A DNA stretch of 64,000 bases from Macrostomum lignano (lineage: Eukaryota): positions 150,041-214,040 of the forward strand of contig NIVC01002003.1 of assembly GCA_002269645.1 (NCBI GenBank), given 5' to 3'. The position numbers were made by a program, and so were the translations under genes. This document shows, piece after piece, positions 16,673 to 64,000 of the stretch. Below the pieces are notes generated by a model. The model was given only the letters and a program-made list of their open reading frames with translations. It did not search any database and had not been told where the DNA came from. Each line of letters starts with the position of its first letter. Position 1 is the stretch's first letter.

Positions 16673-16778
16673 CCATCACCTACTCTCTCTGCAATCTTTT
16701 CCTGGAACGGATAATGACAAAACCCATGGAGGAACTGGATGAGGTCGGAATCAGCTGCGGAGGAATGAATATCAACAA

Positions 16779-43841: not shown

Positions 43842-44009
43842 GTCTCATCTAAAATAACATGTTTTTCAAAATAGCCATGAACTATGCACCTTTCACAAGA
43901 AGCATAGCCACTATGCCCTTTTATACACTTAATAAAGGCACGAGCTGGTGCATCACAAATGAACATAATATTGACTTTTGACTCAATAATTAGCATTTAA
44001 CCCAATTAT

Positions 44010-45385
44010 CCCAATTACCCCATTTATCCCAATCCCGATGATTCCAATCTTGCAATCCTGATCCGATTTATCCCAATCCCGATCCCATTTATTCTAATCT
44101 TGCAATCCTGATCCCATTTATTCCAATCCCGATCCCATTTATTCCAATCTTGCAATCCTGATCCCATTTATTCTAATCCCGATCCCATTTATTCCAATCT
44201 TGCAATCCTGATCCGATTTATCTCAATCCCGATCCGATTTATCTCAATCCCGATCCCATTTATTTCAATCTTGCAGTCCTGATCCCATTTATTCCAATCC
44301 CGATCCCATATATTCTAATCTTGCAATCCTGATCCCATTTATTCCAATCCCGATCTCATTTATTCCAATCTTGCAATCCTGATCCGAATTATCTCAATCC
44401 CGATCCCATTTATTCCAATCTTGCAATCCTGATCCCATTTATTCCATCCCGATCCCATTTATTCCAATCTTGCAATCCTGATCCCATTTATTCCAATCCC
44501 GATTCTATTTATTCCAATCTTGCAATCCTGATCCCATTTATCCCAATCCCGATCCCATTTATTCCAATCTTGCAATCCTGATCCCATTTATTCCAATCCC
44601 GATCCCATTTATTCCAATTTTGCACTCCTGACCCCATTTATCCCAATCCCGATGATTCCAATCTTGCAATCCTGATCCGATTTATCCCAATCCCGATCCC
44701 ATTTATTCCAATTTTGCACTCCTAATCCCATTTATTCCAATCTTGCACTCCCGATCCCATTTATTCCAATCTTGCAATCCTGATCCCATTTATTCCAATC
44801 CCGATCCGATTTATTCCAATCTTGCAATCCTGATCCCATTTATTCCAATCCCGATCCCATTTTTTCCAATCTTGCAATCCTGATCCCATTTATTCCAATC
44901 CCGATCCCATTTATTCCAATCTTGCAATCCTGATCCCATTTATTCCAATCTTGATTCCATTTATTCCAATCTTGCAATCCTGATCCTATTTATCCCAATC
45001 CCGATCCCATTTATTCCAATCTTGCAATCCTGATCCCTTTTATTCTAATCCCGATCCCATTTATTCCAATCTTGCAATCCTGATCCGATTTATTTTAATC
45101 CCGATCCGATTTATCTCAATCCCGATCCCATTTATTTCAATCTTGCAGTCCTGATCCCACTTATTCCAATCCCGATCCCATTTATTCCAATCTTGCAATC
45201 CTGATCCGATTTATCCCAATCCCTATCCCATTTATTCCAATCTTGCAATCCTGATCCTATTTATCCCAATCCTTATCCTATTTATTCCAATCTTGCAATC
45301 CTGATCCCATTTATCCCAATCCTTATCCCATTTATTCCAATCTTACAATCCTGATCCCATTTATCCCAATCCTGGTTCCATTCCA
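44010..45385. repeat. Satellite of alternating 21-bp (atcccatttattccaatcccg) and 29-bp (atcccatttattccaatcttgcaatcctg) units
   Basis: Direct reading. Confidence 0.95.
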
Positions 45386-45719
45386 GGTTAACAAACTGGA
45401 CAGACAGAACAGGTGCCCAGTAATAAATTCTGTGGATCTTTATTTGACAAATTATTTGTACGCTTTCTTTTACAATTTTTAATTAAGCAATTGTTAAACT
45501 ACTTCAAAAACTGTTTATGTAGTAAAATGTGTGCCCTAGCAACTGACAGAGTATACATATAGCAAATAATAAAAAGGAATAGGAAATCTGGGGAATATAG
45601 GAAATCATTTTTATCGTTTAAAAAAACTCTCTCAACAGTTGCTATGTATAGAGTTATGCTACTGAACTTATCAATTTGTCAGGTGTCAGAAACAGAAAAC
45701 GTTTGGATAGAAAACTTCT

Positions 45720-45847
45720 TCATTCTTCAACGGTGCTGCGGCTGCCGCTGCGGCTGCGGCTGCGGCTGCGGCTGCGGCTGCGGCGGGGTAGATCACGGCA
45801 CTCTGCCGCGATGTGGCCGCGCCGCAGGCAGAATCGGCAGAGTCCGA
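45720..45847 (-). CDS. Putative terminal exon: CCHC zinc knuckle + RS-dipeptide tail
   Basis: ttttttacag acceptor; CRFCLRRGHIAAEC (C-X2-C-X4-H-X4-C) then RSRSRSRS from a (GCTGCG)n microsatellite. Confidence 0.35.
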
Positions 45848-46508
45848 CTGTAAAAAATAAAGCTATTAGATTTGTCACATTAGTTTTGTGACGTATATTC
45901 TCTTGAATAATTGGTCTACCGGCGACATTCTCGCGATTCATGGCTCTCAAGTTCAAGAGTACGCCCAGATGATAAGCCTCGGCTGTTCGCAAGCGGAAGT
46001 GCATCCCTGGCCAGAAAATTCGCAAGCCCGTATAAAACAAAACGGTCACAAAAAGGGGCTGTTACCGTTCCACTTGATACCGTGGTCTGTAATGATTGTG
46101 ACCGTTTATTGTGACCGTTTATGTTCATGATAATAAGGTAACACGATACCGTTCATAGTTACCATATTTGTGACCGTTTTTTCAGAGTCACATGTTACCG
46201 ATCAATGTTACTGTAGTTTCCTACCGTTTGTTCAGACTCACATGTTACCGATCAATGTTACCATACTTTGTGACAGTTTTGTTTAGGGTACTATGTTACT
46301 GTTTACTGTTACCGTATTTTGTGACCGTTTTGTGACCTTGTGTGTTCCTTTTCTGACTATTGACCAACAGTATTATAATATGTAAATAAGTAACAGGAAT
46401 ACGAATCAGCAGAAATATATTAGATGTGAAATAACCAGTAGTTACAGCAATAAAGCTTTACGCGAAGCGCGCTAGTATTCAAATGCATTATATGGTGCAT
46501 ATAGTTAC

Positions 46509-47645: not shown

Positions 47646-47650
47646 CTCGC

Positions 47651-49770
47651 CTAGTCCGTTGGAAACGGCAACTCCGTCCTAGGCCGGTTGCGGCGGGAAG
47701 AGGCTCGGTCCTCTTCGGTTGGCGAGCGCTCAGTGCGCTTGAATGCTCGGCGGTGCATTTCTGTGCTGAAATGCGGTTCAATTTGCGAGCGGATGCGGGC
47801 GATGCGGCTAACATAAGTCTTGGACCTAGGATTAATAATCAGCCTCTCAGGCTGCCTACGATTCCTAGCCGGCCTACCGGCATCTACAATTCCTACAGGC
47901 GCTTCCACCGGAGTGGTGCATAGCGACGGCCCAGGGGTCTGGACCACAGAAAAATCAGCACTGGGGACGGGAGCAGAAACGGGCGGAAAAGAAACAGCAG
48001 GCATAGACGCATCAAGAACAGGCTCATGCAAATGACATTCACCATACGGCACTGGCTCACGCCGAAGTGCACTTGCCTGGTTCGCTGGTGTCGTGACCGG
48101 TCCACCTCCTGGCTGCACCTCCGGGATCGCCAAAGGCCGGAAGTGCCATCGGAAGGCCGGCCTTGCGTCGTAGCCGTCATCATCATCATCGTCGGGGTCG
48201 TCCTGGTCGTCTTCGGGAATCGGCGTCAGGGTCGCGGGTCCTGCGCAATCGGGGACGTCGGGCGGCCGCCGGCGTTTCTTCGGCTTGTCGACTTCAGGAT
48301 CAGATGTCCTCGTGTAGTCAGCGTCAGGCACGAGCAGAAGGTTCCGGCGATGGACGACTAGTTCGTCTCGTCTAGCTCTCGGGTTGGGCAGTCTCCGTCG
48401 AATCTTGTAGACAACCTCGCCCTTAGGCTCGACAACTTCGTACAGTGCTTTGCGCGGTCGATAAAACTTCTCCGCCTCGTCCGGTTCAAGCACCGGATTG
48501 TTGAGGAAGACCAGATCACCGGGTTGAAGCTTCTTGGCGGCGGGCAGGTTCGAGTAGTGCTCGTCTCGCAGTTGCTGGTGCAGATGCAGGCGCTCCTTGG
48601 CTAGCTCAGTCGCCTCGTCCAGGCGACGTTGGAAGTCCTTGACGTAGTCGGGCAGGTTGGCATACTCGGGCAGGTTCTTTAGGGCAGCTTCTTCAGCGCG
48701 TTGTCGATCGGGAGTCGGAAGTCACGGCCGAACACCAGGTAGTGAGGCGTGAAACCGGTCACCGGGTGCACGCTGGAGCGGAGAGCCATCAGGCAGGCCG
48801 GGAGGAAGGTGTCCCAGTCGTTGTGGTTGCGCTCGAGCAGACAGGTGAGGACACTCTTCAACTGCTTGTTGAGGTTCTCGACTTGTCCATTGGAAGCTGG
48901 ATTGTACGGTGTTGTTGTCGTATGCCGAATGCCAAACAGGTCGCAGAACTTCTTGAAGGCCGAACTGGTGAAGTTGGTGCCTTGGTCGGTGTGGATCCAG
49001 CATGGTACACCGAACTCGGGGATGAAGCGCTCCTGCAGAAGCTTGATGACTGTCTTGGCTTCCTGGTTTCTCATCGGGTAGGCGAATGGATACTTCGACG
49101 GCGCATCGCACAAGGTCATGATGTAGCGGTTGCCGCTCTTGCTCTCCTGCGCGATCGGTCCTACTACATCACAGTGGATTCTACCCAGAACTTCGCAAAC
49201 TGGGAAGCTCTGGACCGGAACTCTCTCTCGCCGTCGCGATTTACTTTCAAGGCAGGTGCGGCACTTACTGATGAAGGTCTTGGTAGCACGGGCTAATCCG
49301 GGTCTCCAGAGTAGCCGCAGTAACGTCTTCGTCTCGCCGAGGTGTCCACACAGTGGCGAACTGTGGAGCTCCTGGAGCACCTGGGCGTCAAGGGCCTCAG
49401 GCAGAACAACCTTTGGCGGCTGCTGGCCATCGGACAGGTCAATCAGCAGCAGGCCGTTGTCCTCCTCCAGGTTATCGTAGTATCCGAGCAGGTTCCGCTG
49501 CTCCTTCGTCAGTCGCAACCGGGCGTCGAACTCAGGCTTCGGGGCTTCGTTCTCGACCAGGTTGAGCACGTAGCTGATGGCTCGGTCAGCGCGTTGGGCG
49601 TCAACGAACTGTTGGCGAGTCATCGGCAGCTTCAGAAAATCAGTGAGCACAGCGTGGCATGGCTGAGGGGTCCGGATTCCCGCAGTCTCCGCTTTAATGG
49701 CTCCAAGTCGATCACACGGCACCGTCTTGTCGGCGTCAGGATTAGGTCGCTCCGAGGGACTTTGTCTCAA
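47651..49770 (-). CDS. Integrase (H2C2 zinc finger, DDE core, C-terminal module), frameshifted
   Basis: LHSSPLCGHLG...CRTC; IHCDVVGP; IHTDQGTNF; NGQVENLN; YEVV...VYKIR...VVHRRNL. Confidence 0.92.
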
Positions 49771-52700
49771 CGTCGGAGTACGTCCGTTGATCTCGAATCG
49801 AAGTTCTCATCGTCGCTCTCTTGACAGAAAATTCCGCAGATGGAGCAGCGCGCATGCCTCCACTGCCTAGCCCAGGCGACTCTTGGCTGTAGGGCGGGAC
49901 GCAACACGTGAAGCACGCCTCGTCACAGGCAGCCGTAGCCGTCGGCTCAGTCGTCGTCGAAATTGGGTGAGTCTTCTCCTGCACTGGACGGTGTCGCAAA
50001 GGGGGACTCGACTTTCCGCACAGGCGATGAGCAGCTGTCTGTCGGCCCGGGGGACAGAGCTTCGACCTTGCAGCTGGCGCGAGATTCTGGCCTCTGTCAA
50101 CACGGCGAGAAATCTCAGCGAAAGGCTCGGAGGGGTTGTAGTTAAATTGCTTGCCTGGAGTTGCGTTGCGGGCCGTCATCAGAAGGGCTGCTGGTGCGGT
50201 GGCCTTTGAATCTTGGTCCGTGTGCGTCTTCAGAGTCCGAGACCTGTAGTCTTGGGCGTCGTCAAGGTCTGTGTCCCCAGTGGCCTCAAGGTCTTCGTCC
50301 AGGTTGGTCTCCAAATTGCAGCGGGCGGCATGGGCATCGCGGCAGAGGACTGTTGTCGCAGTGGCCTCTGAGTTGTCGTCCAGGCCGGTCTCCAGGCGTT
50401 GACTGCAGCGGTGGGCGTCGTGCTGGAAGGCTGCTGGCGCGGTGGCTTCCAGGTCTTCGTCCAGGTCAGTCTCGGCCTCCAAGCAGCGAGAGTGGACTGT
50501 CTTCAGGAGGGCTGCTCTGGCAGTGGCCTCGGGTTTCGGGTCCAAATCCGGTTCCAGGTCGTGGTCGTCACCGGGTCGGGCTGTAGAACCAGGTTGCTCT
50601 AGCAGTCTGCCATGCTCGAAGGAGATCGGCGGCGCCTCCGGTCCTCTTGACAGGGCATCAGCGTTGGCGTGGTCCTTGCCCTTGCGGTGGTTGAGCTGGA
50701 AGCGGAACTCGCTTAGGCGTTCGATCCAGCGGCCTAAAATACCTGTGGCCTGAGTCTGGTTCAGTAACCACAGTAAGGCCCGATGATCGGATCGAACTTC
50801 AAACTTCTTGCCGATTAGGTAATGACGGAAATGTCGCATAGCGTCCACAATTGCAAGCAGCTCTTTCTTCGTGACCGTGTAGCGCTTCTCAGGATCGCGA
50901 AGTTTACGGCTAAAGAATGCAATTGGACGTTCGACGCCGTCGGATTGCAGTTGTCCAAGGCAAGCGCCTATTCGAATATCAGAGGCATTCGTGTCGAGGA
51001 CAAACTTCACAGCAGGATCAGAATTAAATTCAGGCAGAGCGAGAACTTCAGTAGAACACAATTTCTTCTTCAAGGTGTCGAACGCTACCTGATGCTCGGG
51101 AGTCCAGTGCTGCCGCAGGCTGCCAATGTCCTTTCGCGTCAGGGCATGCAGCGGCGCAGCCACTCCAGCGTAGCCGTCGACAAACTTGTGGTAGTAATTG
51201 GCGAGGCCTAGGAATTGTCTCAGTTAAGTAACGGACTGTGGCACGGGCCAATCACGGATCTGCGCAATCTTGTCCTCACAGGTCTTCAGGCCGTCGGGAG
51301 TCAGGACGTGACCTAAATAATGCAGCTCCTTGAGGAACAAATGACACTTCTTCGGTTTCACTTTGAGGTTGGCTGCGATGATGCGCTGGAGTACAGTTCG
51401 CAAATTATCCAGCTGTTCCTCGAAAGTCACTAAGTGCACCACGATGTCATCCATGTAGCCAAGCGCAGTCCTTGGCGTCAGGCCGTCCAGGAGCTTATTG
51501 ATGCAACGCTGAAAGCTGCCGGGACTATCGTGGAGACCCATCGGTAGAACGTTAAAACAGAATTGGCCGCGGTCGATTACTGAGAATGCCGTCAAGTGCT
51601 GGTCGCAGTCGCGCAGCGGGATCTGCCAGAATCCTTGAGCAAGGTCCAAGCTGGAATACCACTGAGCACCACGAAGCTTCGCGAAGGTTTCCTGGATGTG
51701 CGGCAGCGGATACGGGTGATACACACACCTGTTGTTGAGAGCTCTGAAGTCGTGGACTAGTCGGATGTTGCCGTCCTTCTTGGGCACGATGAGCATTGGC
51801 GAATTGTAGCTCGAGTAGGCAGGGCGAATGATGTGCTTCGCCAACATCTCGTCCAGCAGGGCGTCGAGTTTGTCCTTCAGATGAAGCGGGATTCGGCGCG
51901 GTGGTAGCGCGACTGGTGTCCGGTCCTTCAAGATGATCTCGTGGGTCACCAGGTGAGTCAGGCCGGCGTCTAGCGAGTGCTTGGAGAAGGCCGCTTGACA
52001 TTCGACTAGTAGATCTCGCACTCTTTGATGTTGTTCTTTGGACAATTCGCTGTTGATCTCGACTTCATCTAGCCATGCTGTGCTGGACTCTTCAGAGTTC
52101 TTCGGGAGGTGTCGCACTTCAGGTTCGGGCGTCTCGCTCAAGTACATCAGGTCGGCAGTTCGGAGTGGGGTTGCAACACCAACACGGATACCGGCTTGCA
52201 GGAACACCTCGCTGTCGGCGGTGTTGACGACCTCAATGTAGCCGCGACCTTCAGGCATCGTCATCAGAGCAGGCGCTGCTTCCAGAGCGTTGCAGCTGGG
52301 ATGCAGCCTCGACTTAACCAGCTCGACAATTGATGGCGATCCTCGATTCTCAGGGTGGCCGTCATCCAGTCTGACGGCAAGCAGCGCTGAACTTCTAGGC
52401 GGCAGGGTGCACTTCTCAGAGGTGTACACTCGGCAGTTCTGAAGCTCACGCCGCGAATAACGAACGGGGATGCACGCGCCATTGTTAAACTTCAACATTC
52501 CTTGAGCGAAGTCCAAGTTCTGGCAGTGCTCTCGCATAAACGATACGCCAAGCAAATTTTCGCAATCGGAGACCATGACGAGGAATTCGGTGTCCGCGAC
52601 GACATCACCGAACTCCACCGGAATGGTCACCTTACAAGCAAGTGGGAGCTGCGTCCCATCATACATAGTTACGCAATCGGGAATAGCATGCGATATAATA

Positions 52701-53056
52701 CAACGAGGCATCCGGCGTCTAATAGCGGCCCAGGTTGACGAACCAAGAAAGTTTTTCCGGCTGCCGCTGTCAAGCAAGAAAGGGACCTCTCGACTCGCAA
52801 CTCGACCTGTGACGTACGGATCGGCCTCACGCGCATGGATTTTTTGATTCGGGGAGGTGTCCACGAAACCTCCGCACTCCGCGTCACTTACTGACGAGCG
52901 ACTGTCGGAGTGGGCATTGGCGCCTGCACAGCCGACATCCTCTTCTTCTGGTGACCTCTCGGAGTCTGCCACGTAGCCTGGACTTGGACCTCGCGGAGGG
53001 CGGTGCCGTTGTCGCTCTCCGCCTGGCCGTTTCCCTGGTTCTGGCGCATCGGGCAC
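49742..53056 (-). CDS. Protease-RT-RNase H with a long repetitive linker, frameshift near 51200
   Basis: FLLDSGS (protease); YSSLDLAQGFWQIPL and YMDDIVV (RT); LDTNASD...KELLAIV...RSDHRAL...ADALSR (RNase H). Confidence 0.95.
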
Positions 53057-54136
53057 TGGGTAATGCGGTGACCTGGCTGTCCGCAGCCATAACGGACTAT
53101 GGCCCTCTGCGGCGGACTTGCTACCTGCTGCTGGTCACGCTGCACTAGGTGATCAAGCAGTCGCTGCTGCTTCTCGATCAAGTCGGTTAGAGTTAGCAAG
53201 GCTTGGGCGGTGACGTCGGGCTTCGGGTCGCCGTCCTGCTCCCCGTCCAACATCCTAACCGGGGGTTGAGCGGTTCGCTGCGCCAATTCTTTGGCGCCTT
53301 CTAGTCGTCGTAGTTCTCGAATCGCAGCAAGAAGATTATTTGGGCGGACCCAGTACAGCCGTTCACGCAGGTCTGGAGTCGTCCGAATACCAGCAAGAAA
53401 TTGATCCGCAATCTCCTTCTCGTGGTCTTCAGGGTGCATCCGAGGATACACGTTCACCAAGAGTTCTCAGGGCGTCAGCAAACTCTTCTGCTGACTCATT
53501 CTTGCCTTGTTGACGACGTCGCAACAGTTCTCTGTACTCATCAGCACCACCATGACGGGCAAATCGCTCAATCAGACGCTGCTTGACCTCCTCGTAGCTG
53601 GCGAAACGCGGAAGATTCATACTAAGCAAGGAAGGATACGCAGTAGCCAAATCAAGACTCGCGATGAGGTGTTGTTTCATCTCGAACGGGTCGACGATGC
53701 GCTCCATCTCGCAACGCTGCTCGAACGCGGCAAGCCAGACATGAATGTCCTGACTTGGAGTAAACTTCACAATTTTAACTTGTTTACTCACGGGCCGCTC
53801 CATCTGCTGCTGCAGAGCTGCCATGATGGTCCTCACGTCCTGGTGCATGATGTTCCGGCCGATGTTGTCCAGGCCTTGCAGAAGCTCGTCTGGCGGGTCG
53901 TCGGACACCTCGCTTCTCGCACCTTGCCTCGGCGTTGGCTGCTGACCAAAGTCGTTGATCGCTGCTGCTGCTGCGGCGTCCGCTGCCGCAGGCCTCGAAC
54001 TGCTGATGTGCTGATCCAGCCGGCTGCTGCACCGGCTCTCGTCTCGTTCGTTGAACATGTTGAACTCGTAGTAGTTACTGGCCGATGTCGTTCTCGAAAG
54101 AGAGGTTGGCTTGGGTGTGTCGTAGTCGGATCTCAC
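52888..54136 (-). CDS. Gag (frameshifted, degenerate zinc knuckle)
   Basis: HVWLAAFEQRCE...YEEVKQRLIERF...QGKNESAEEFADAL...DQFLAGI; GCGQPGHRITQC. Confidence 0.85.
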
Positions 54137-54150
54137 CGCTGCGTCACCAG
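54131..54150 (-). other. Primer-binding site, tRNA-Leu-like
   Basis: TGGTGACGCAGCGGTGAGAT one base after the LTR end; resembles TGGTGGCAGCGGTGGGAT with a 2-nt insertion and one mismatch. Confidence 0.55.
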
Positions 54151-55144
54151 TGAAGTACAGTTGGGTTTCTTGCCGGTTTAGGCACTTAAGGATTACCTTA
54201 AGACTCGAGCCTCTTCAGTGGGAAGTTCTCTCAACTCTCAGTAGCGTAGGTAGTGCTGCCACCAGTTCCTTCAGGTCTCGGCCTTCGGTGAGGTGAGCTT
54301 CCCGTCGGAACGAAATAATGAAGTCAACGAACACAGCACAGCGTGCAGATTTAAGCGCAACGAATAGGGCGTCTCGTCAGCAGTACCTGCCGGGCTAGGA
54401 TGGTAGAGGGAGGGCTGAGTTAGCCTCTCGTAGACTTGGGTTGACTTGGTCGGGTTTCAGTCGGAGCAATAGGAATAGAATCAATATGCGCAAAGGCTCA
54501 GACACTCGGGATTTAGTCACACGCAGACGTAGAACTCGAGGTTGAACAGAAAGAAGACTCCTTGACGGAAACAAGGGGGAGAGGGCTCCTATTTATAGCC
54601 GGAAACACCCGCGCTCAAGACCTCGTGACTTGTTCTATTTTTAGAACTGACGTCACTCGAGAGTCTCGGGCAGGGTACAAGCGCGCGGAAGACCTCGTGA
54701 ATTGTTCTATTTTTAGAACTGACGTCACTTGAGGTCCCCGGCCAGAGTACACGCGGCTGTGACTCAGTTGCTATTTTTAGCAACATGAGTCACTCCTCTC
54801 CTTAGAGAAGGGAGGGGTCCGAAAGCACGTGACTCACCCGGTAAACAGGGCCAACGAGTGCAGTAAACATGTTTACTGCACTTTAAGACTCAAAGAACGC
54901 AAGAACTGTCATGTGACTTGCTCACAAGACAGGGAAAACGGGACGGGAGCGAAACAGAGACAGCTAACAGCCGAGAGGCTGGGGGCTGAGAACAGAGACG
55001 CAACCGAGCGACAAAAGGGCGGGCGACAACAAGCAGACAAAAGGGGGGGCGGGAAGCTGACCAGCGGCAGACAGCAACCCAGGGCGAGGGCGAGGGAACA
55101 GCTGACAAGGGCGACGCCTAACCATAAACTAGCGGCTCACTACA
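54151..55144 (-). repeat. 5' LTR (994 bp), TG...CA
   Basis: Homologous to the solo LTR at 16779-17713; TATAAATA box; two TGACGTCA sites. Confidence 0.92.
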
Positions 55145-55149
55145 TCAGC

Positions 55150-57495
55150 TAGTGTTTGAGTAGGTTCTAATTTTCTAGTCTGTTCGAATTTAAGTCTTAA
55201 AGCTTGAATCCTATGATGCTCTTTTTCAGTCGCCTCTCATTTGCATGCTGAACCTTTGGGCATTTGAAGGAGAACGCCGGGTTTTCACCCCCACAATTAG
55301 CGCACTTAAAGCCCGTATCTTTGGGGCAGTCGCCGGAATAGTGCGTCCCGGCACACGTTGCACACAAAACCGGCGTTGCACCTGCTTTCGGTGTGTCCAA
55401 GGCCTTGACACCTGTGGCACTGAATCTCCTTGACCGGTGGAAGGTTGTGCGGTTCTTCGCACCGGAATTTCAGTGCCCAAGCTTTATGCCGTTCTCCAGG
55501 CAGGTGTCGTAAGTTGCCCTTGACTTTGTAAACATCCTGATGAGAGGTGTCGGTTGGCCTGAGGCAGGCGCCTAGTGACAGTGTGCCCATTAATTTCGTT
55601 AACTTTTAGTGTTGTTGTCAATAAGTTGTTCATGTCGTGTGGAGAATTAGTAAATACGTAGTATCTTGAGCTATGATACAGCTCTTTTACTGACACGATG
55701 CAAGTGTTAGGAAAGTTAATTTTTTTTAATGTTTGAATTTAATATGATTCTTGGCCTCAAAGGGCATCTCAAATACAACTGGCGTAATTTTAGTTAATTT
55801 AGAATTATTAGATTGTTGTGAGTTTGACTGCTGAGTGCGTGCTTGTGGCTGCTGAGTGTGAGTGCTTGGCTGCTGAGTGCGAGTGGTTGATTGCTGAGTT
55901 GCTGGCAGATGGTAGCTATTAGGCTGCTGAGTGTGGGTGCTTGATTGCTGAGTGTCTGGATGCTTAGGTTTAGTTGACTGCACGGAATTCACAGTGCTAG
56001 CCGTAGCTGGCTGTCGAGTCTGGTTTGCAAAATTAGTTTATTGGTTGGTTGATTGTGTCTGCTGCGTCTCTCGTTGTGTTTGCTGTAAGCCTGGTGGTGA
56101 CTGCTGAGTGACTGGTTGTGACTGCTGAGTAACTGATTTTGACTGCTGAGTGCCTGGCTGAGTGGCTGCTAGTGATTGTTGCGTGCCTGATTGTGAGTGC
56201 CGATTGGCTGCATGATTCTGCTGAGTGTTTGACGAATGTTGCTGAGTGCCTGATTGTGTGTGCTGATTGGCTGCGTTTGGCTGCTGAGTGTTTGGCTTTG
56301 ACTGCTGAGTAGCTACCTTCTGAGATTCTGACTGCTGAGTGTTAGGTTTAGATTGCTGAGTGGTTGCTTGAGACCGCTGATTGGCTGGTTGAGTTTGGTC
56401 TGTTTGGTCGGATTTAGCTTTTCGCCTCGAGTTACTGCTGGAACGTGATCTAATTTTGCTAATGTTTTCAGCCTCCTGCCTGGCCATACGGCGTACAGAC
56501 TCTGCGTCATCGAGGTCGCAGGTGATGGCCTCTTCAGGAAGCTGGATGCAAGGATTGCCAGGCTAAGAAGCTGGTGAGTCGAAGATTCTGTTATCACTAG
56601 TGACTCTGAATGTTAAATTAATTCGAGGTTCCTTAACTTTGAGGTCCTTTGTGATTGAGTGTTGCAAGAACCGTTGCGTAGCCCACTCATTATCGTGATG
56701 CTACCACTGGCAAGCCTCTGCGAGTAGACTATATTCTGGCTCTGGCCCTTAGTCCTAAGCTGGAAGTCTCGCTGAGCTCCCAGCGACACCGACACAATGG
56801 TCGGGTCGTGGCCTAACTCTGGTTCGTTGTCAGAGTGCCATGGGATGGCTACCGATCCATCTTTATAAAAGTTGATCAGGCACGAATTACTAGTGGCAAT
56901 CTAAGCTCGACGTGAAGCCAAATGGCTAAGTGAGTGACGACTGGGTGCCAAGCGTCGTTGCACTCAATCTTAGTACCCCCGTAGGTGTACTCAAGCCCAT
57001 ACCAAACTATTTTCCTGGCCTCAGGCTTGCCCTTGGTTAGATGGTGGAATGAGTTTGGATAAATGTCTTCCATTAAAATTTTATTTAGCTTGGCTTCAGA
57101 AGATTTGAGCGCATTTGGCAGATATCTAATTTTGCAGTTAGTTAAAGGCTGGCCAGTTTTGTCATCTGTGAGGTCTGGTTCTGGTAGACTGAGTATCAAT
57201 ATTTTAGTTGCTTTTCCTAAGTCTGCTAGTTTACTACTCTTGACAGGCTGGCTCTCACCATCGCTGGCCACATGAAGTTCTTCAGTCACTGTCTGCTGTT
57301 GCACACAAGTCGGCGCATTGCTGGAGGACGCAGAACAGGACCTCTGGTCTGGACCGAAGGAGGACCGGTTGTTGGCCTTCTTGGTGCTGACTGGCGGCGA
57401 GTCAGTGTCTCTAGAGGCACATCTTTTGCTATTGACTTCTACTTCCATTGCAGATTGATGCTAGTACTAAGTGTTGACAAAATAAAGCCAAAATT
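55150..57495 (-). mobile_element. LINE A (I/Jockey-like): 5' part with ORF1 = AlkB domain + Gln-rich linker + three CCHC-type knuckles; cut by the gypsy insertion
   Basis: ATG at 57448; QCHRCQGLGHTESRC, CATCAGTHYSGDC, CANCGGENPAFSFKC; AlkB motifs listed separately. Confidence 0.85.
56605..57070 (-). pseudogene. AlkB-family (ALKBH2/3-like) 2OG-Fe(II) dioxygenase domain in LINE A ORF1
   Basis: After correcting small indels: RKIVWYG..YTYGG, NSCLINFY, PWHSDNEPELG, IVSVSLGAQRDF, LASGSITIMSG, FLQHSI, PRINLTFR (HxD...H...RxNxTxR). Confidence 0.88.
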
Positions 57496-57511
57496 AATAA
57501 ATGAAAACAAC

Positions 57512-60500
57512 TTTTACTTTTTTTACTTTAATAAGTAGGGGCTAATATAATGTTGCCCTGCGCCTCAGCCCTTTGAAGGCCTCTTGCGCAACTTTATATT
57601 TTTACGCGTATGTTCGAATTATTAGAAGTTATAGTCGTCCAATTTAGGAAAAAAATAAAATCGAGGAGTATTTACATAAAACAAATATTTGGGGTAGCTA
57701 TTAACAAATAATACTAGTATAAAAAGGAACAAAAGATGAGGTCAAGTGTAAAACAAGAATTTGAGAGTTTGAGAAATAAACTAAAACGATCATTTTTTTA
57801 TAAATTTAGGATTAAAAACAAAGAATAAAACACAAAGAAAATATTTGAGCAATATTGGACAAAATTAAAAGTTTTTTAGCAATATTGGAAAAAATGAGGT
57901 AAAACAGTTGGCAATATTTTTAAAAAATATGATGTCTTAATAATTTGAATACAAAAATAATTGCATTGGATTAATACTTAGTCATCAATTAGAATACGCC
58001 TGCAGTAAAGGTTGGATTCTCTCCCGGAGAGAGGTGCTCGTGTCTATATTTTAATCAATTATTCCAAGGAATAATCAATATATAATGTCAAATCCTAATC
58101 AAACTAGTCGAGTCAAACTTTGTCCGTATAAATAGCTAACTGGACCCTACGGGGTGAATAACAGCTCACTCAGTCAGAGTTAAGGGCCTTTTGGTCCACC
58201 TGGTTTGGGGTTCCAGGTTTAAAACGTCCCCGCCTGAGGGAGCTGTGGATAGAGAGGGCTATGCAGCCTAGCCAATGCTAGTACCCCTTGGAAGGCAGGC
58301 GATAACTTCGGGAGCCGTTCCGTCATACGGCAAAAAATTGCAATTATACAAAGGGAAGAGGGTCGACAGACCAAACTCCAACTGAAAAGCACAATATTTG
58401 TTTTATAGCCAGGAAGTTTTTTCCTGAGCGCAGCTGTGACCGGGACTCGAAAGCCGGGTCTCAACCATTCTTTGGTGTCATCTTTGAATTTGTGAATACC
58501 ACTAACGCTTTTTGAACCATTTTTCCCTAGGCTAAGTAGGCGATATTTGATCATGGGCATGTTGGTGACCAAGTGGATGTAAGAGTTTTTTATGTAAGGC
58601 GGAGCATCAAGGGAGATGCGCAGAGCCTTGTTTTAGAGTACCTGAATTCTGTTGACTTGGAAGTCGGAAGATTAAGAAGGATGGGAGCACCGTAAGTGAT
58701 GGTACTTTCAATGAAAGACCTGTAGATCAGTCCTAGTCCGTGCTGGGAGATTCTTTTTGCCATTCTGGCTAACGCAGCAACCTTATTTGTGGTAGAACCA
58801 ACGACCTTGTTAATATGAGATTTGTAGTTGAGTTGTTTGTCTAGGACCATTCCAAGAAAGGTGACAGTGTCATAATAACTAATTATGTTGTTCCCGAGTT
58901 TGATCAGGGGTTCACCCGGGCCTGTTTTGTTGCCATTTGCCTTAAAGAAGGAGATTGCTTTACTTTTAGAGGGATTAATAGTAATGCCAACGGCATCAAG
59001 CCACCTTTTGAGTCGATAAAGTAGTCATTGAGTATTTTAGCAGACATGCTAAGGTTTTTTCATAAAGCTTGCCTAAACAAGAGGTAAGGCTGATAGGCCT
59101 ATAGCTATCAATGAGGTTTTTAGGTTTATTTGGTTTGGGTATCATTTTGACAGTAGCCATTTTCCATCGCTTGGGAAGTATCAAGGAGGAAGCTAGCATT
59201 AAAGATCTTTGCAAGGACTCTGATGGAGTCTGGACTCAGGCCAAATTTGAGGACAATGTTCGGAATCTTGTCAGGCCCGGGAGCCCCTCCTGCCCTGAGC
59301 TTCCTACTCTCCCAAAGAACATCCTGATCTATGATGTTGAGAATATCAGCTTCAATGTCTTTTTTGTCTGGATTATCAGGATCGGCATGGTCTTTATGAT
59401 AGGTTAACGCAGCTAAGATGTTATGGGGTTTGTAGATCTCATGATCTTTTTGGGCCTCAATTCTCTTATAGAGCTGGGAGGATCTGTCTGGACAGGGACG
59501 CATCTGAGCCTCAAGGAACTCCTTGAAGGCCTGTGCTTTCTCAGCTTCAGTTTCAGCAACAGAATCCTTGAGAACGATTGGGGGGTACGAGATCGGTTTA
59601 GGACCTTCCCCCGTCATTTTTTTATATCAATCCAAAAAATTTTGGTTCATTTCGGTAGCTGGTTTTGGAAATTTTTTTGCATAACTTTTCAAACTTCCTA
59701 TATCTATGCATACGGATGGCGAGCCTGATCTCCTTAGCGGCTTGATTCGCCTGAATCATAAAATGGTCAATCCGGGTGTTTCTAAAGAGTTTTCTAAGTT
59801 TCCTCCTGTGTTTAATTTTTGCTATTATGTCTGGGGGGAGTTGTCCGCGGGGATCTCTGTTTGGGATCACCTCAATCGTGTCGTGCAAGCCCTGGGTTAG
59901 CAGGTCTACAGCCCTATCTAATTCAGCTGGAGTGGCCAACCTGAGATAGTTGATTAGTTTATCACTGAGTTTGTCCTGGAGAACAGCCCTGAAGGTTTCC
60001 CAATCAGTGCTCCAGAAGCTTTTAGGGGGGGGGGTTCGAAATTTTACAGTTTGGGTCAAGGTAAACTTTTATGATGATGGGAAAGTGTCACTATCCATGT
60101 CATCACCTATGGGAACCTCACTAGTGTGAGGACCAAGATTGGGGGAGCAAAGCCCCAAGTCCAGCTCATTAGCGGTGTGGGAGCCGCCACGATTACACAC
60201 TCTGCTGAATTCACCATAGTTATTTAATAAAATAGGGGGGTTGGGGTGGTTTTCAAGCCAGTCAAAGAGCTGTCTGCCGGGGTAATTGTAATTTGTGTCT
60301 CCACCTAGGGCAGAGTGGTTACAGTTGAAGTCCCCTATAACCAAAGTGGAGGAATTTGTGAAAAGATTTTTTAGAATGTCGCAGTTTAGCTTGGTAGGGT
60401 TAGGCGCCCTGTAGAAGAGGACTATATTAAGTTTGTTTAGCCTATTATGCTTTAAGAAAACCTCAAAGCTAATAAACTCATGGTTACTGTTATCAAAATA

Positions 60501-63174
60501 CTTTTTGACATTCATAATGTTTAGATTATTTTTGTAAGCAACTGCGAGGCCTCTTCTACAGTGAGGTTTATCAAATCTAAGGATGGCGTAGTCTTGGACA
60601 AAGAAAGGGTTTGTGTCAACTAAGCCAGTTTCAGAGAAAAGTCCTATGTCTAAGTCCTCATTTTTTAGCCACGAGATTATCTCATAGATTTTGTTGCTGA
60701 GCCCGTTGCAGTTCAGGTGTCCAATAATGAGGGAGTCCCGCACAACAGAGTGACTTTTAGTCTTAGTCGTAGAAGTATTACGAGGAGAGTTGAATTAATA
60801 GAGCAGAGCTAAGCAGACTATAGAAAGAGAGTTCAGGTTTCACCTCCGTTCGCTTGCACGACTTTGGTGTCCCCTGACTCAGCAACAGGCCCTCTTTGAC
60901 ACCTGAACACCCTAACGACTTCAGACACCACCCGGAAGACGATTGCCCCGCCTCCCAGGATGTGAACATCCGTCCTTGTTCAATTTCATGAGTCGGTCGA
61001 GCGCCTGTAACACTACATCGAGCACATCTTCCCGAGAGAAAAAGCCCCTCTCACTTGGTCCTATTTGGTTAGTTGATTCAACTCCTGGATGCATCATGAC
61101 CGGATTGGCTGGAGCAGTTGTTGGCGGCTCAAATGTGTTGATTGCATCAGACAGAGCATTCTGGTTGGCTGAGGCGACTGAGGCGGCGGCGGCAGCATTG
61201 GCAGATGAGGCGGGGAATGATGCTCGTTGGGCTTCGGCAGCTTTGGCAGCTCGGTTAGAGAAGGCTATTGGCCCGAGAACCGGCTGCGGACGCATGGCAT
61301 CTGCGTAGGAGATTGGCCCAGGGACGCCGAAGGTTTCCCCAAGGGTCTGGCTGTTTTCTGGCTTATGGGCTCTCAGCTGTTGTTGTTGCTTTCGGATTCG
61401 GTCATGTTCTTTGGGTTGCCAATTCGTTAGCCTCTCGGACTTTAGAGCATTTGAATGAGAATGCCGGATGGTTTTCGCCGCAATTTGCACACTTGAAGAC
61501 TTGGTCTTTGGGGCAATCCATTGAGAAATGATTGCCAGCGCATTTGTTGCACCTATAGTTTGCTGTGCAGCGCGCCTCATGGTGACCGAGTCCTGAGCAC
61601 CGCTTGCACTGGATAGCTCTGACGGGCGGGAGACTATTAGATTCTTCGCATCTATATTTCACAAATCCTAGGTAGATACCCTGTTGGATGCAGCTATCTA
61701 CTACTCTTTGGCACTTGGTGAATAGCCTTACGAAGGGAGTCGGCTGGCCAGTCTGTTTGGAGATAATTCTAACTGCTCATCTATTGAGAGTTGCTGGTCA
61801 GAGTCATTTAGGTGCTTGGCTAGACCGCTTACGTCGACCGCTAGCGGAACGTTACGGACAATGAAGGAGAGAACGTTCGGAGATTTGAGGGGGGCTCGAA
61901 CCCTCGGCTGGTCATTAGCTTGGTGGACAGGTCTCTTAGCAGCAGTGCGCCTGGTGACTTCAAAGTCATTAATTGAGCTGATTTTCATTGGAGCTGTTAA
62001 GAGCGTATTGAAGTCCCTGGGATGCTCAGGGTGGACAATGTAGCCAGGTGAGTGGCACAGATCTTTAACTGATTTGATTCTTACGTTACGGAAATTAGTC
62101 TTTAGCAGCCACTCAAACTATATTGGATCATTTCCTTCCAGGGCGACTTCGAAGATGACTGGTGCAGATTTGGTCTGCCTGGACTGGCTATTGTTGGCGC
62201 TGGATTTAATGCTGGATTGGCTAGCCCTTCTGATTTTCTCTAGGTTGACTCGCTCTTCTTCAGCTTTTCTACGAATAGAGTCTTGGTCATCAAGGTCGCA
62301 AGAGATGACTTTGATCATCAGTGGGATTATCAGTGGGAGTGATGAGATCCTGCGACTGGCGAACGCAAGGGTTCAACGAGGGCGCTGGAGACTCGGAGAC
62401 CAGATTTTCAGAAGTCATTCGAAAGGTGAGATTAACGCGAATGTCTTTTACTTTAGGGTCTTTGTAGATGCTGTGCTCAAAATATTTCTGAGTTGCACCA
62501 CTCATTACCAACAAACTGCCAGACTCGAGAGGTTGCTTAAAACAATGTTTTTGGACTGCTTGGATCTAATGGCTAATTCTCTTGTAGCTCCCAGCGAAAT
62601 AGAGGCTATTGTCGGATTGGGGCCAAGTTCGGTCTCGTCATCAGCGTGCCAGGGGATGTTAACATGCCCCGATTCGTAAAAATTTACTAGGCCGGAGTTG
62701 AACAGTGGTAGCCCAAGTTCGACGTGGAGCCAGGTAACTAGCTTGGTTAACTCCGGGTACCAGGCCTCATTGGCTTCCAGACTACCACCGGAATAGGTGT
62801 ATGCGGGCCGTACCAGACAATTTTTTCTTTTTTTCTGGTCTACCATTAGTTAGATGGTGAAAGGCTTGCGGGAGGACATCTTTGATGATCAAGCAGTCAA
62901 GCAGTCAAGCATCTTTGAAAGCGTTAAGTCTGGCGCTAAAAGCCGCTGTCTCGCACGAGCCGACGCGCCGCGCACCGAGCCAAGCCACCGAGCCGCCGCC
63001 GCCACCAAGAAGTAGGACCAGTACGCAGTGCGTAGCCGCTGACGCCGGTGCAGATAAAGACCGATGTAGGACCTGCACGTAGTGCGATGCTGCTGTAGAG
63101 CGGAGAGCACCAGGAGATGTAGAGCAGGCAATGTAGAGCAGGCGGTGTTAAGCAAGCAAGTTGAGCAGGTACGG
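57512..63174 (-). mobile_element. LINE B (I/Jockey-like), 5.66 kb, flanked by 16-bp direct repeats; AlkB-ORF1 and APE-RT ORF2 with the RT core deleted
   Basis: ORF1 QCKRCSGLGHHEARC, CNKCAGNHFSMDC, CANCGENHPAFSFKC; APE HLNCNGL, SETG, VIGDFN, LDLGL; RT start WKMATVKMIPKP...YRPISLTSCLGKLYEK jumps to the thumb region FLGMVLDKQLNYKSHI; flanks at 57496-57511 and 63175-63190 differ at 1 of 16 positions. Confidence 0.9.
62395..62880 (-). pseudogene. AlkB-family dioxygenase domain in LINE B ORF1
   Basis: YTYSGG, FNSGLVNFYESG, PWHADDETELGPNPTIASISLGATR, LESGSLLVMSGATQ, FEHSI, IRVNLTFR (frameshifts present). Confidence 0.9.
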
Positions 63175-63190
63175 AATAAAGGAAAACAAC

Positions 63191-64000
63191 ATTCATTCAT
63201 TCATTGTTGAGTATTCGGGCTTAAATAGGCCCGGCGCTTCAGCCTTTTCGGCTTTTACGCCACAATGTATTTGTAGGTTATCGAGTTTTTATTGACATTC
63301 GATTTCAATATTTTGTTAAAAGTGCATAAAATAAAACAAATAAAACAGTGTATCAGATAATGTATAAAGTAGCAATCGAAGCAATAAAAAATCTGACTAA
63401 GGTGAATCGAAGATGAAGAGAACGAAGGCATTAGAACAAATCGAAAAAGGAAATTGTGAGGAGATGTAAAACAAATTAAAACAGTAGAGATGATTAAAAC
63501 ATGTACAGTTCAAAGTCGGAGAGAGACAGAAGATGAAGCAGAGCACAAAGAGGCGAGGGGTATAGGCAAAGTTGCGTCAGTGTTATTGTATATTGAATAT
63601 TTGGCATATTGGCATTAAATTTTGGAATAATGCATAAAATGAAATAATTGTTAGTTGTACAATAAAATTGTATACATGTATTGTCATGAATATTTTCTAA
63701 TGTAAAAAATTTTTTATCACAGATTTATTTGAGATTTCAATTTTTTTTTACAATTACATCAAGAGTTTGTTAGGTTTTAATCAATAATTGCTCTTGTTTG
63801 ACAATACTGCTCACAGTTGAACCTAAGCACAGCATGGGTGCCACATTAGACATTTCTCAGACGGGCCACTGCAGGCATCCTGAACCCTCTCCTATCCCAT
63901 TTCTTGGTGTCTAGGTCGAAGTTGTGTACTCCAGACATCTCGGTGTTTCTGTACAGCGCTTGGCTAGATTCCAAATGCGCTCTTTGATTCATCGGCATTT
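63191..64000 (-). mobile_element. LINE C: 3' end (ORF2 C-terminus, 3' UTR, (AATG)n tail) of a third related element
   Basis: MPMNQR...SGVHNFDLDTKKWDRRGFRMPAVARLRK aligns with LINE B MPMIKYR...SGIHKFKDDTKEWLRPGFRVPVTAALRK; same 3'-terminal motif as B. Confidence 0.8.

What the first reader, a model, noticed from the sequence alone, without database searches (positions are those of the whole stretch)
55150..62880. LINE retrotransposons whose ORF1 carries an AlkB nucleic-acid dioxygenase (two diverged elements)
Seen: two neighbouring LINEs, clearly different at the DNA level, both place an ALKBH2/3-like domain at the N-terminus of ORF1, upstream of the triple CCHC knuckles. A is at about 56605-57070 and B at about 62395-62880. 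Both retain the full Fe/2OG signature: A has HSD...H...RINLTFR and B has HAD...H...RVNLTFR. No introns are evident. Known: AlkB enzymes oxidatively remove methyl lesions (m1A, m3C) from single-stranded DNA and RNA, and AlkB domains are fused into replicase polyproteins of plant RNA viruses (Flexi-/Closteroviridae). The ORF1 accessory modules I know for I/Jockey/CR1-type LINEs are RRM, CCHC, PHD and esterase. Inference: conservation in two diverged families implies the domain was selected in the lineage. As an ORF1 domain it would coat the element's RNP and could repair or demethylate its RNA or cDNA, protecting reverse transcription or countering host methylation-based defence. I do not know of a characterised example but cannot exclude existing Repbase/Dfam records. 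Both copies here are frameshifted.
Basis: partly seen in the sequence, partly recalled or inferred. Interest (0 to 1): 0.92.

Follow-up and report, generated by a model that had tools for sequence, protein, structure and literature searches.

The report
LINE retrotransposons carrying an AlkB repair enzyme
Two decayed jumping genes (LINEs) in this window, and intact relatives in the flatworm Macrostomum lignano and in unidentified sequencing runs, carry an ALKBH3-like enzyme that removes methyl damage from RNA and single-stranded DNA, fused to their RNA-binding protein, and I found no published description of this.

Summary
On the minus strand, two LINEs that are diverged at the DNA level each carry an AlkB domain (Pfam PF13532, E=9e-27 and 1e-20). 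It sits upstream of an RRM-like region and three CCHC knuckles, and both copies are frameshifted. The architecture is real, not a chance adjacency. Intact ORF1s of 843-962 aa with AlkB, two RRM-like folds and three CCHC knuckles exist elsewhere. Each is followed directly by an APE or APE+RT ORF2, and one 9-kb contig holds a complete element. Macrostomum lignano gene models show the same layout. All metal-binding and 2-oxoglutarate-binding residues are invariant across these lineages. The domain is as constrained as the RRM and CCHC modules (omega about 0.11). By sequence and predicted fold it belongs to the ALKBH2/3 repair subfamily, closest to ALKBH3, not to the m6A erasers. Whether it came from a host or a bacterial gene is unresolved. 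The most likely function, which is inferred, is removal of m1A/m3C lesions that block reverse transcription from the element's own RNA or cDNA. I found no prior description. A related AlkB ORF also sits upstream of a Penelope-like RT/GIY-YIG ORF. These LINEs also form precise head-to-tail arrays.

The parts
63190..64000 (-). 3' end of a third related LINE (element C). It comprises the ORF2 C-terminus (63998-63846), a 3' UTR, a double hairpin at about 63260-63215 and an (AATG)4 tail at about 63205-63190. It directly abuts the 5' end of B.
   Evidence: tblastn of B's ORF2 C-terminus gives 53% identity. The sequence was read. The RNA fold has z=-4.0. The junction was aligned.
62902..63189 (-). 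Element B: 5' terminus (TTGTTTTCCTTTATT at 63189-63175) and the degenerate N-terminal part of ORF1.
   Evidence: Motif search. The GGGGSVAWL stretch resembles the N-terminus of M. lignano P0001.
62383..62901 (-). Element B: AlkB (Fe(II)/2OG dioxygenase) domain of ORF1, frameshifted near 62824/62801 and 62553-62532.
   Evidence: Pfam PF13532, E=1.2e-20; tblastn; motifs NFY, HADDE, H and RVNLTFR.
60921..62382 (-). Element B: rest of ORF1. It comprises a linker with the CDLDD motif, an RRM-like region (about 62180-61700, with stops), three CCHC knuckles (61662-61402) and the C-terminal region (61402-60921).
   Evidence: Three-frame translation. Homology to P0121, P0122 and P0123 over 37-94% of the query.
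58219..60743 (-). Element B: ORF2. It comprises the APE endonuclease (60743-60069), a linker, the RT N-part (to about 59047) and the RT C-part (59030-58590). An internal deletion removes residues 563-723 of the intact relative, including YADD. A short C-terminus follows (58572-58219). There is no RNase H.
   Evidence: Pfam PF14529/PF03372. tblastn with the intact ORF2 of L005. YADD is at residue 703.
57511..58218 (-). Element B: 3' UTR with a double hairpin (57589-57545) and an A-rich tail (AAAGTAAAAAAAGTAAAAG, about 57530-57512).
   Evidence: Sequence, motif search, RNA fold, junction alignment.
57188..57510 (-). Element A: 5' terminus (TTGTTTTCATTTATT at 57510-57496), the ORF1 ATG at 57448 and the N-terminal region.
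   Evidence: The N-terminus (CASRDTDSPPVSTKK) matches M. lignano P0124.
56566..57187 (-). Element A: AlkB domain of ORF1, frameshifted near 56879 and 56682, with a stop after ...DSPAS.
   Evidence: Pfam PF13532, E=9.1e-27. ALKBH3 is the best PDB match, E=3e-25. tblastn.
55197..56565 (-). Element A: a linker (CDLDD motif plus a Q-rich low-complexity stretch, 56565-55800), a degenerate RRM-like region (55800-55560) and three CCHC knuckles (55560-55197, with stop TAA at about 55197).
   Evidence: Three-frame translation; ORFs.
55146..55196 (-). Element A: short stretch after the ORF1 stop. The element is cut at 55146, where the LTR of a Ty3/Gypsy element begins. A's ORF2 is not in the window.
   Evidence: The LTR boundary comes from the match to a second copy at 16778-17561. 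No further ORF2 relative was found.

Best explanation
SHOWN: A and B are dead copies of two diverged families of an APE-type LINE lineage. Its ORF1 protein is laid out as a disordered N-terminus, an ALKBH3-like Fe(II)/2-oxoglutarate dioxygenase (AlkB), a low-complexity linker, two RRM-like folds, three CCHC knuckles and C-terminal helices. Its ORF2 has APE and RT but no RNase H. The AlkB module is an integral part of ORF1 under purifying selection, and its full catalytic signature is kept in every lineage examined. INFERRED: ORF1p binds the RNA that encoded it and coats the RNP, so the tethered AlkB is held against the element's single-stranded RNA. During target-primed reverse transcription it would also sit against the exposed single-stranded cDNA and target DNA. 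There it would oxidatively remove N1-methyladenine and N3-methylcytosine, and similar lesions on the base-pairing face. These lesions arise preferentially in single-stranded nucleic acid and are hard stops for reverse transcriptases. Clearing them from a 5-6 kb template should raise the yield of full-length, replication-competent copies. This is the role proposed for the AlkB domains in plant flexivirus and closterovirus replicases.
For: Domain identity: PF13532 at E=1e-20 to 1e-31 in A, B and ten relatives. Subfamily: the best PDB sequence matches are human ALKBH3 (92 bits) and then ALKBH2 (59 bits), and E. coli AlkB does not pass E=0.01. The AlphaFold model of P0123 has an AlkB domain with block-mean pLDDT mostly 73-94. 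Its best Foldseek hits are ALKBH3 (TM 0.79-0.85, 32% identity) and ALKBH2 (about 0.81). ALKBH5, ALKBH1, ALKBH6 and E. coli AlkB reach only about 0.6 and about 20% identity. Catalytic residues: NxY, HxD(D/N)E, the distal H and RxxLTFR are invariant in all 11 transposon sequences aligned. Architecture in intact copies: L005 has ORF1 of 843 aa and ORF2 of 948 aa (APE 2e-11, RVT_1 3e-39, YADD). L001 and L007 have ORF1 followed within 1 nt by an APE ORF. In L009 from M. lignano, ORF1 is followed by an ORF2 homologue. The model also shows two beta-alpha-beta-beta-alpha-beta units (residues 314-383 and 414-489) before the knuckles. Selection: between A and B pS is 0.79 and pN 0.30. Between P0123 and P0130, omega is 0.11 for AlkB, 0.18 for the RRM-like region, 0.12 for CCHC and 0.32-0.38 for the linkers. 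That m1A and m3C block RTs, that ALKBH3 prefers ssDNA and RNA, and that viral AlkB domains repair RNA are established knowledge, not tested here.
Against: No biochemical activity, substrate or expression was tested. The dS values are near saturation, so omega is approximate. The nucleotide-recognition lid was not analysed, so substrate preference is inferred only from subfamily resemblance. The distribution looks narrow: M. lignano, one run series of an unidentified organism, and this window. If lesion removal were generally advantageous, one would expect it in more LINE lineages. The window copies themselves are dead.
Confidence: 0.55

Rival explanations
1. Counter-defence by erasing regulatory marks. 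The ORF1-tethered AlkB would remove enzymatically installed RNA methylation (m6A or m1A) that the host uses to mark transposon transcripts for decay or silencing. This is what was proposed for the AlkB ORF of orchid Ty3/Gypsy elements.
For: There is a precedent: the orchid Gypsy AlkB demethylates m6A in vitro (PMC9289625). The catalytic residues are conserved. ALKBH3 is also reported to erase m1A in mRNA and tRNA; this is my own knowledge and was not tested.
Against: The domain is of the ALKBH2/3 repair type. It resembles the m6A eraser ALKBH5 only at TM about 0.6 and about 19% identity. The orchid domain is described as similar to m6A demethylases, so the two are independent acquisitions of different subfamilies.
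Confidence: 0.2
2. DNA-side function. The domain would repair 3mC or 1mA in the single-stranded target DNA or nascent cDNA, for example 3mC made as a by-product of DNMTs. Alternatively it would recruit or replace host alkylation repair at the integration site rather than act on the RNA template.
For: ALKBH3 and ALKBH2 are DNA repair enzymes and are the closest folds. M. lignano is reported to retain DNMT1 and DNMT3 (PMC9246332). ORF1 proteins of this type bind both RNA and ssDNA; this is my own knowledge.
Against: ORF1p is mostly engaged with RNA. There is no evidence for which strand is the substrate. This overlaps with the best explanation rather than excluding it.
Confidence: 0.15
3. Non-catalytic or accidental. 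The AlkB segment would be only an extra nucleic-acid-binding or spacer module, or a chimeric artefact such as a host ALKBH3 exon captured next to a LINE, or merged gene models.
For: Some M. lignano gene models are fragments or chimeras; for example P0124 lacks the RRM and CCHC parts, and P0122 starts at RINLTFR.
Against: The same order of modules occurs in one uninterrupted ORF in at least five diverged lineages, each followed by ORF2. All Fe-binding and 2OG-binding residues are invariant and omega is about 0.11, which a mere spacer would not show. The M. lignano host-type ALKBH3 (P0138/P0279) is a separate protein that sits next to named metazoan ALKBH3 proteins in the first NJ tree.
Confidence: 0.05

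Closest known systems
Human ALKBH3, and ALKBH2 (repair-type AlkB homologues)
   Same: Same fold, and the best sequence and structure match: 92 bits, TM 0.79-0.85, 32% identity. It shares the HxD...H iron triad, the NxY and RxxxxxR 2OG contacts, and the acidic residue after HxD.
   Different: Here the domain is not a free-standing host enzyme. It is the N-terminal module of a retrotransposon RNA-binding protein. The NJ tree puts all transposon domains in one clade, but only with weak support, and that clade is not nested in metazoan ALKBH3. Identity to eukaryotic and to bacterial AlkB is equal, at about 0.32-0.42.
AlkB domains in replicase polyproteins of plant Flexiviridae and Closteroviridae
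   Same: An AlkB module is embedded in the replication machinery of an RNA-templated genetic element. The presumed role is to clean methyl lesions from the element's own RNA.
   Different: Those are RNA viruses of plants, and the domain sits in the replicase between the methyltransferase and helicase domains. Here it is in an animal LINE, in the RNA-coating ORF1p rather than the polymerase protein. No sequences were compared here.
AlkB (2-ODD) ORF of giant Ty3/Gypsy (Ogre/Tat) elements in Phalaenopsis orchids (PMC9289625)
   Same: A retrotransposon-encoded AlkB-family dioxygenase. This is the only transposon example I found in the literature.
   Different: That is an LTR element of plants, with the domain at the C-terminus of a separate ORF2. 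It is similar to m6A RNA demethylases and has m6A activity in vitro. The present domain is ALKBH3-like, fused within LINE ORF1, and in animals.
Type I LINE ORF1 (RRM + CCHC; Khazina and Weichenrieder), and esterase- or PHD-bearing ORF1s of CR1/L2 elements
   Same: The C-terminal two-thirds of the protein (two RRM-like folds and three CCHC knuckles) fit type I. An accessory enzymatic module in ORF1 has a precedent in the CR1/L2 esterase (PMC4120745, PMC13343379).
   Different: Neither the Jockey-superfamily ORF1 survey nor the 2026 study of CR1-group elements lists AlkB among ORF1 modules.

Membership tests
AlkB family, ALKBH2/3 subgroup of Fe(II)/2OG dioxygenases | Match to the family profile (PF13532) above the curated threshold | tested here: met
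   95 bits for A and 75 bits for B against a cut-off of 31.2. Relatives score 53-121 bits.
AlkB family, ALKBH2/3 subgroup of Fe(II)/2OG dioxygenases | Iron triad HxD...H, and the 2OG-binding NxY and RxxxxxR motifs | tested here: met
   These are invariant in 11 transposon sequences, including A and B.
AlkB family, ALKBH2/3 subgroup of Fe(II)/2OG dioxygenases | Double-stranded beta-helix fold closest to ALKBH2/3 rather than to ALKBH5, FTO, ALKBH1 or E. coli AlkB | tested here: met
   For the P0123 model, Foldseek gives ALKBH3 TM 0.79-0.85 and ALKBH2 about 0.81, against about 0.6 for the others. By sequence, ALKBH3 scores 92 bits, ALKBH2 59 bits, and E. coli AlkB gives no hit.
AlkB family, ALKBH2/3 subgroup of Fe(II)/2OG dioxygenases | Oxidative demethylation of m1A and m3C in ssDNA or RNA | not testable with these tools
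   This needs an enzyme assay.
APE-type non-LTR retrotransposon (LINE) | ORF2 with an N-terminal APE endonuclease followed by an RT carrying YxDD | tested here: met
   B has the APE domain and an RT with an internal deletion. The intact L005 ORF2 has APE at 2e-11, RVT_1 at 3e-39 and YADD at residue 703.
APE-type non-LTR retrotransposon (LINE) | An upstream ORF1 that binds nucleic acid, on the same strand and directly preceding ORF2 | tested here: met
   The ORF1 stop and the ORF2 start are 1 nt apart or less in L001 and L007. In L005 and L009 the two ORFs are colinear.
APE-type non-LTR retrotransposon (LINE) | No LTRs, a 3' tail of simple repeats or A-rich sequence, and target-site duplications | tested here: inconclusive
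   The tails are (AATG)4 in C and an A-rich AAAGT-like run in B. TSDs could not be defined, because the elements abut one another. A 16-nt sequence recurs at the junctions in L009.
Jockey/CR1/L2 supergroup of LINEs (exact clade) | RT phylogeny with reference elements | not tested
   No reference LINE set was available. The ORF2 homologue search returned only distant hits (22-27% identity), one of which is named 'jockey-like'.
Jockey/CR1/L2 supergroup of LINEs (exact clade) | No RNase H in ORF2, and a 3' UTR stem-loop with a microsatellite-like tail | tested here: met
   ORF2 ends soon after the RT. A double hairpin with a CUGA motif is conserved in B, C and L005, and a similar hairpin pair was read by eye in the L009 sequence.
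Type I ORF1 (RRM + CCHC) | RRM folds followed by CCHC zinc knuckles | tested here: met
   The three CX2CX3-4HX4-6C motifs were read directly. zf-CCHC scores 21.1 bits against a 20.8 cut-off in P0131. The model shows two beta-alpha-beta-beta-alpha-beta units. Pfam RRM models did not hit.
Viral AlkB domain (Flexiviridae/Closteroviridae replicase) | Embedded in an RNA-virus replicase polyprotein | tested here: not met
   The context here is LINE ORF1, and no viral replicase domains are present. The element may work like these domains but is not a member.

The most novel reading that the evidence does not exclude
An ALKBH3-like 'template-cleaning' module is a mobile accessory domain of animal retroelements. 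It is fixed in a whole lineage of LINEs as part of ORF1p. A related copy has been taken up by an unrelated class, a Penelope-like element with a GIY-YIG endonuclease. This would make it the first nucleic-acid repair enzyme encoded by animal retrotransposons. It would also show that methyl damage, or methyl marking, of the RNA template limits retrotransposition, in convergence with plant RNA viruses and orchid Gypsy elements.
Probability: 0.35. Interest if true: 0.85.

Novelty: new variant of a known kind. Interest (0 to 1): 0.72.

Why it matters
LINE ORF1 proteins are thought of as RNA chaperones. The only accessory enzyme in the ORF1 surveys I read is the CR1/L2 esterase, whose role is obscure. 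A repair-type AlkB that is fused to ORF1p, catalytically intact and under purifying selection gives a concrete, testable idea. The idea is that chemical methylation of the long single-stranded template, or enzymatic marking of it, limits reverse transcription, and that retroelements can evolve their own eraser. The same answer has been reached by plant RNA viruses and by a plant LTR element, which would make lesion removal a recurrent need of RNA-templated replicators. There is also a practical point. Database gene models such as the 'Fe2OG dioxygenase domain-containing protein' entries of M. lignano are transposon ORF1s. They can inflate or confound inventories of host AlkB repair genes, such as those used to study the co-evolution of ALKB2 and DNMT.

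Tried and rejected
(1) Bacterial origin of the domain. The word-indexed homologue search returned M. lignano first and then only AlkB proteins of about 200 aa; the few that carry a name are bacterial or metagenomic, which suggested horizontal transfer. The exhaustive profile search interleaves named metazoan ALKBH3 proteins, including the M. lignano host-type protein P0138, with unnamed short AlkB proteins at 138-156 bits. In the NJ analysis, identity to both groups is equal and no sister group has support. I therefore treat the origin as unresolved.

(2) The first NJ trees were uninformative. Midpoint rooting and the short 141-column alignment split the transposon sequences, and one run timed out. 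The 189-column tree recovers a single transposon clade, but bootstrap support is only 16%.

(3) Naming the LINE clade failed. The ORF2 search gave only distant hits at 22-27% identity, and PDB offers only L1 and R2.

(4) Identifying the organism of the window failed. Exact look-ups of two window ORFs found nothing. The window shares no DNA similarity with the nine loci fetched by then, L001-L009. The SRA run numbers appear in no paper. The nearest proteins are from M. lignano at 51-62% identity, so a macrostomid or related flatworm is only a guess.

(5) I looked for A's ORF2 beyond the Gypsy insertion and found none in the window.

(6) P0219, P0236, P0217 and P0268 are long proteins with AlkB that looked like candidate fusions. 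Judged from their sequences and the few names available, they are host-type ALKBH3 proteins with extended termini.

Full report
OBSERVATION. The region holds LINE sequence on the minus strand. Element A has an ORF1 ATG at 57448, and element B runs from about 63189 to about 57512. With frameshifts bridged by X, the N-terminal parts of both ORF1s match Pfam PF13532 (2OG-FeII_Oxy_2). The scores are E=9.1e-27 for A and 1.2e-20 for B, well above the curated cut-off. A has NFY, WHSDNE, LQHS and RINLTFR. B has NFY, WHADDE, FEHS and RVNLTFR. Downstream, both have a linker with a shared CDLDD motif, an RRM-like stretch and three CCHC knuckles.

A and B are diverged. BLASTN aligns only two short stretches, at 67-73% identity, and the AlkB domains are 57% identical at the amino-acid level. 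Both are dead. A has frameshifts near 56879 and 56682 and further stops downstream. B has frameshifts near 62824/62801 and 62553-62532.

B continues into ORF2. This comprises an APE endonuclease (PF14529, E=2.6e-7) and an RT lacking about 160 residues, including the YADD box. A stops at 55146, where the LTR of a Ty3/Gypsy element begins. Its ORF2 is not in the window.

IS THE FUSION REAL? Yes. A search with B's bridged ORF1 returned six proteins. Four are AlkB-positive relatives that share ORF1 sequence beyond the AlkB domain. A fifth, P0122, starts at the last AlkB motif. The sixth, P0125, is an unrelated AlkB fusion. P0123 covers 94% of the query in one open frame: AlkB, linker, RRM-like region, three CCHC knuckles and the C-terminus. 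On its contig (L001) the frame is open from an upstream ATG, giving 970 aa. ORF2 starts 1 nt after the ORF1 stop and is an APE domain (PF14529, E=5e-11) homologous to B's.

The exhaustive profile search added P0130 (962 aa), P0131 (892 aa), P0132 (843 aa) and others. L005 carries a complete element. ORF1 is P0132, with AlkB at E=1e-30. ORF2 has 948 aa, with APE at 2e-11, RVT_1 at 3e-39 and YADD at residue 703, and no RNase H. In L007, P0130 is followed directly by an APE ORF.

In the M. lignano assembly GCA_002269645.1, several gene models are such ORF1s or fragments of them: PAA49615.1 (AlkB, RRM-like region and CCHC), PAA54533, PAA54534 and PAA61448, plus the UniRef entries P0001, P0121 and P0124. 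In L009 the ORF1 is followed by an ORF2 that is 36% identical to that of L005 over its whole length. At least five diverged lineages therefore share the architecture.

SELECTION. NxY, HxD(D/N)E, the distal His and RxxLTFR are invariant in all 11 transposon AlkB sequences aligned, while overall identity is only 40-57%. Between A and B, synonymous sites are saturated (pS 0.79) and pN is 0.30. The two intact ORF1s P0123 and P0130 give these Nei-Gojobori omega values: 0.11 for AlkB, 0.18 for the RRM-like region, 0.12 for CCHC, and 0.32-0.38 for the linkers. dS is near saturation, so the values are approximate. The ranking is nonetheless clear: AlkB is as constrained as the canonical nucleic-acid-binding modules.

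WHICH KIND OF AlkB? By sequence, the best solved relative is human ALKBH3 (92 bits, E=3e-25), followed by ALKBH2 (59 bits). E. coli AlkB does not pass E=0.01. An AlphaFold model of P0123 was built from a 9-sequence alignment. It gives a confident AlkB domain (residues 1-222, block-mean pLDDT mostly 73-94) and a disordered linker (223-309). Two beta-alpha-beta-beta-alpha-beta units follow (314-383 and 414-489), then the knuckles, a helix, a disordered stretch and C-terminal helices. Foldseek against the PDB puts ALKBH3 first (TM 0.79-0.85, 32% identity) and then ALKBH2 (about 0.81). ALKBH5, ALKBH1, ALKBH6 and E. coli AlkB follow at about 0.6 and about 20% identity. The domain is thus of the repair type (m1A/m3C, with a preference for ssDNA and RNA in ALKBH3) and not of the m6A-eraser type.

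ORIGIN. The first search listed almost only short AlkB proteins, and the few that carry names are bacterial or metagenomic. This reflects the word index. The exhaustive search interleaves named metazoan ALKBH3 proteins, including a host-type M. lignano protein (P0138/P0279), with unnamed short AlkB proteins. An NJ tree of 136 taxa and 189 columns recovers all transposon domains as one clade, with 16% bootstrap support. The window copies group with three M. lignano proteins at 92%. Mean identity to the eukaryotic and to the short, bacterial-type groups is equal. A host or bacterial source cannot be decided here.

MECHANISM (inferred). ORF1p binds its own RNA in cis and coats the RNP. An ALKBH3-like enzyme tethered to it by a flexible linker would act on the single-stranded template, and possibly on the single-stranded cDNA and target DNA during target-primed reverse transcription. 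m1A and m3C form preferentially in single-stranded nucleic acid and stop reverse transcriptases. Removing them should increase the yield of full-length copies. I consider three rivals. The first is erasure of regulatory methylation as counter-defence, following the orchid Gypsy precedent (PMC9289625), although that domain is of a different subfamily. The second is a purely DNA-side repair role. The third is a non-catalytic role, which is made unlikely by the invariant catalytic residues.

KNOWN OR NEW? The library searches for AlkB or dioxygenase together with LINE, non-LTR, ORF1, retrotransposon, Penelope-like, Repbase or reverse transcriptase found only the orchid Ty3/Gypsy paper. Three further papers do not mention AlkB: the survey of Jockey-superfamily ORF1 modules (PMC4120745), a 2026 study of CR1-group elements (PMC13343379) and the Penelope-like element survey (PMC8557442). 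Repbase and Dfam themselves could not be queried. I rate this a new variant of a known kind: a LINE with a new accessory ORF1 enzyme.

THINGS SEEN ON THE WAY. (a) A related AlkB ORF (P0275, 1012 aa, E=5e-31) abuts, in the -1 frame, an ORF with the DKG motif, an RT (YIDD) and a GIY-YIG endonuclease. This is a Penelope-like element, flanked by (AGTC)n. It was assembled twice at 99.99% identity from two runs (L008 and L015).

(b) The LINEs form precise head-to-tail arrays. The tail of C meets B's 5' end, and the tail of B meets A's 5' end, with a shared 15-mer at 14/15 identity. In M. lignano L009, two copies at 97-99% identity are joined the same way, and a 16-nt sequence recurs at each junction.

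(c) A double 3' hairpin with a CUGA motif is conserved in B, C and L005, and a similar hairpin pair was read by eye in the L009 sequence.

LIMITS. The organism of the window and of the Logan runs is unknown. The LINE clade is not assigned. No function was tested.

Noticed in passing
L008:1-7477 and L015:1-7162 (Logan SRR19430222 and SRR19193851): This is a Penelope-like element. A 1012-aa upstream ORF (P0275) carries an AlkB domain (PF13532, E=5e-31). In the NJ tree this domain falls in the weakly supported clade of all transposon AlkB domains (bootstrap 16-28%). The ORF abuts, in the -1 frame, an ORF with the DKG motif, an RT (YIDD) and a GIY-YIG endonuclease. The unit is flanked by (AGTC)n on both sides. 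The two contigs are 99.99% identical, so this is one element seen twice. AlkB is not mentioned in the Penelope-like element survey that I read.
   Followed up: partly
window 63215-63170 and 57535-57490 (minus strand); L009 about 1164, 5654 and 12108-12130: The related LINEs lie in precise head-to-tail arrays. The 3' tail of C abuts TTGTTTTCCTTTATT at B's 5' end, and the 3' tail of B abuts TTGTTTTCATTTATT at A's 5' end. In M. lignano L009, two copies at 97-99% identity are joined the same way, and AAAGATTTCCGTGGAG recurs before, between and after them. This could reflect site-specific insertion at a conserved terminal motif, a TSD, or tandem duplication. It remains undecided.
   Followed up: partly
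window 57589-57545 and 63260-63215 (minus strand); L005:8985-9065; L009 about 5603-5650: The 3' UTR has a conserved pair of hairpins. The first is a stem, internal loop and stem with a ...GGCUGA... motif. The fold z-scores are -1.8 for B, -4.0 for C and -6.8 for L005. In L009 the pair was only read by eye in the sequence. It is likely the RT recognition structure of a 'stringent' LINE. Covariation was not tested.
   Followed up: partly
window about 47650-55145 (minus strand); second LTR-like copy at 16778-17561 (plus strand): A Ty3/Gypsy LTR retrotransposon truncates element A just after its ORF1 stop. It has a gag ORF at 54136-53429, ORFs that by eye encode protease/RT, an RNase H-like region and integrase at 53056-48679, and an LTR with a TATAAATAGG promoter at 55145-54300. 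Its second LTR was not found in the same orientation in the window.
   Followed up: partly
window 44026-45400: A tandem satellite with a 50-nt period (sub-periods of 21 and 29 nt, at least 33 copies). It coincides with the strongest GC skew in the window: -0.43 for 44001-46000.
   Followed up: no
M. lignano proteins PAA49615.1, PAA54533.1, PAA54534.1 and PAA61448.1, plus UniRef entries (P0001, P0121, P0124, P0134, P0135, P0277): Public gene models named 'hypothetical protein' or 'Fe2OG dioxygenase domain-containing protein' are LINE ORF1s or fragments of them. A separate host-type ALKBH3-like protein exists (PAA75878/PAA53807). Inventories of AlkB repair genes in this species could be confounded by the transposon copies; one example is the statement that M. 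lignano retains ALKB2 alongside DNMT1 and DNMT3 (PMC9246332).
   Followed up: no
window 2110-1733 (minus strand): A short RT fragment of another, distant LINE, with 28% identity to residues 562-686 of the L005 ORF2.
   Followed up: no
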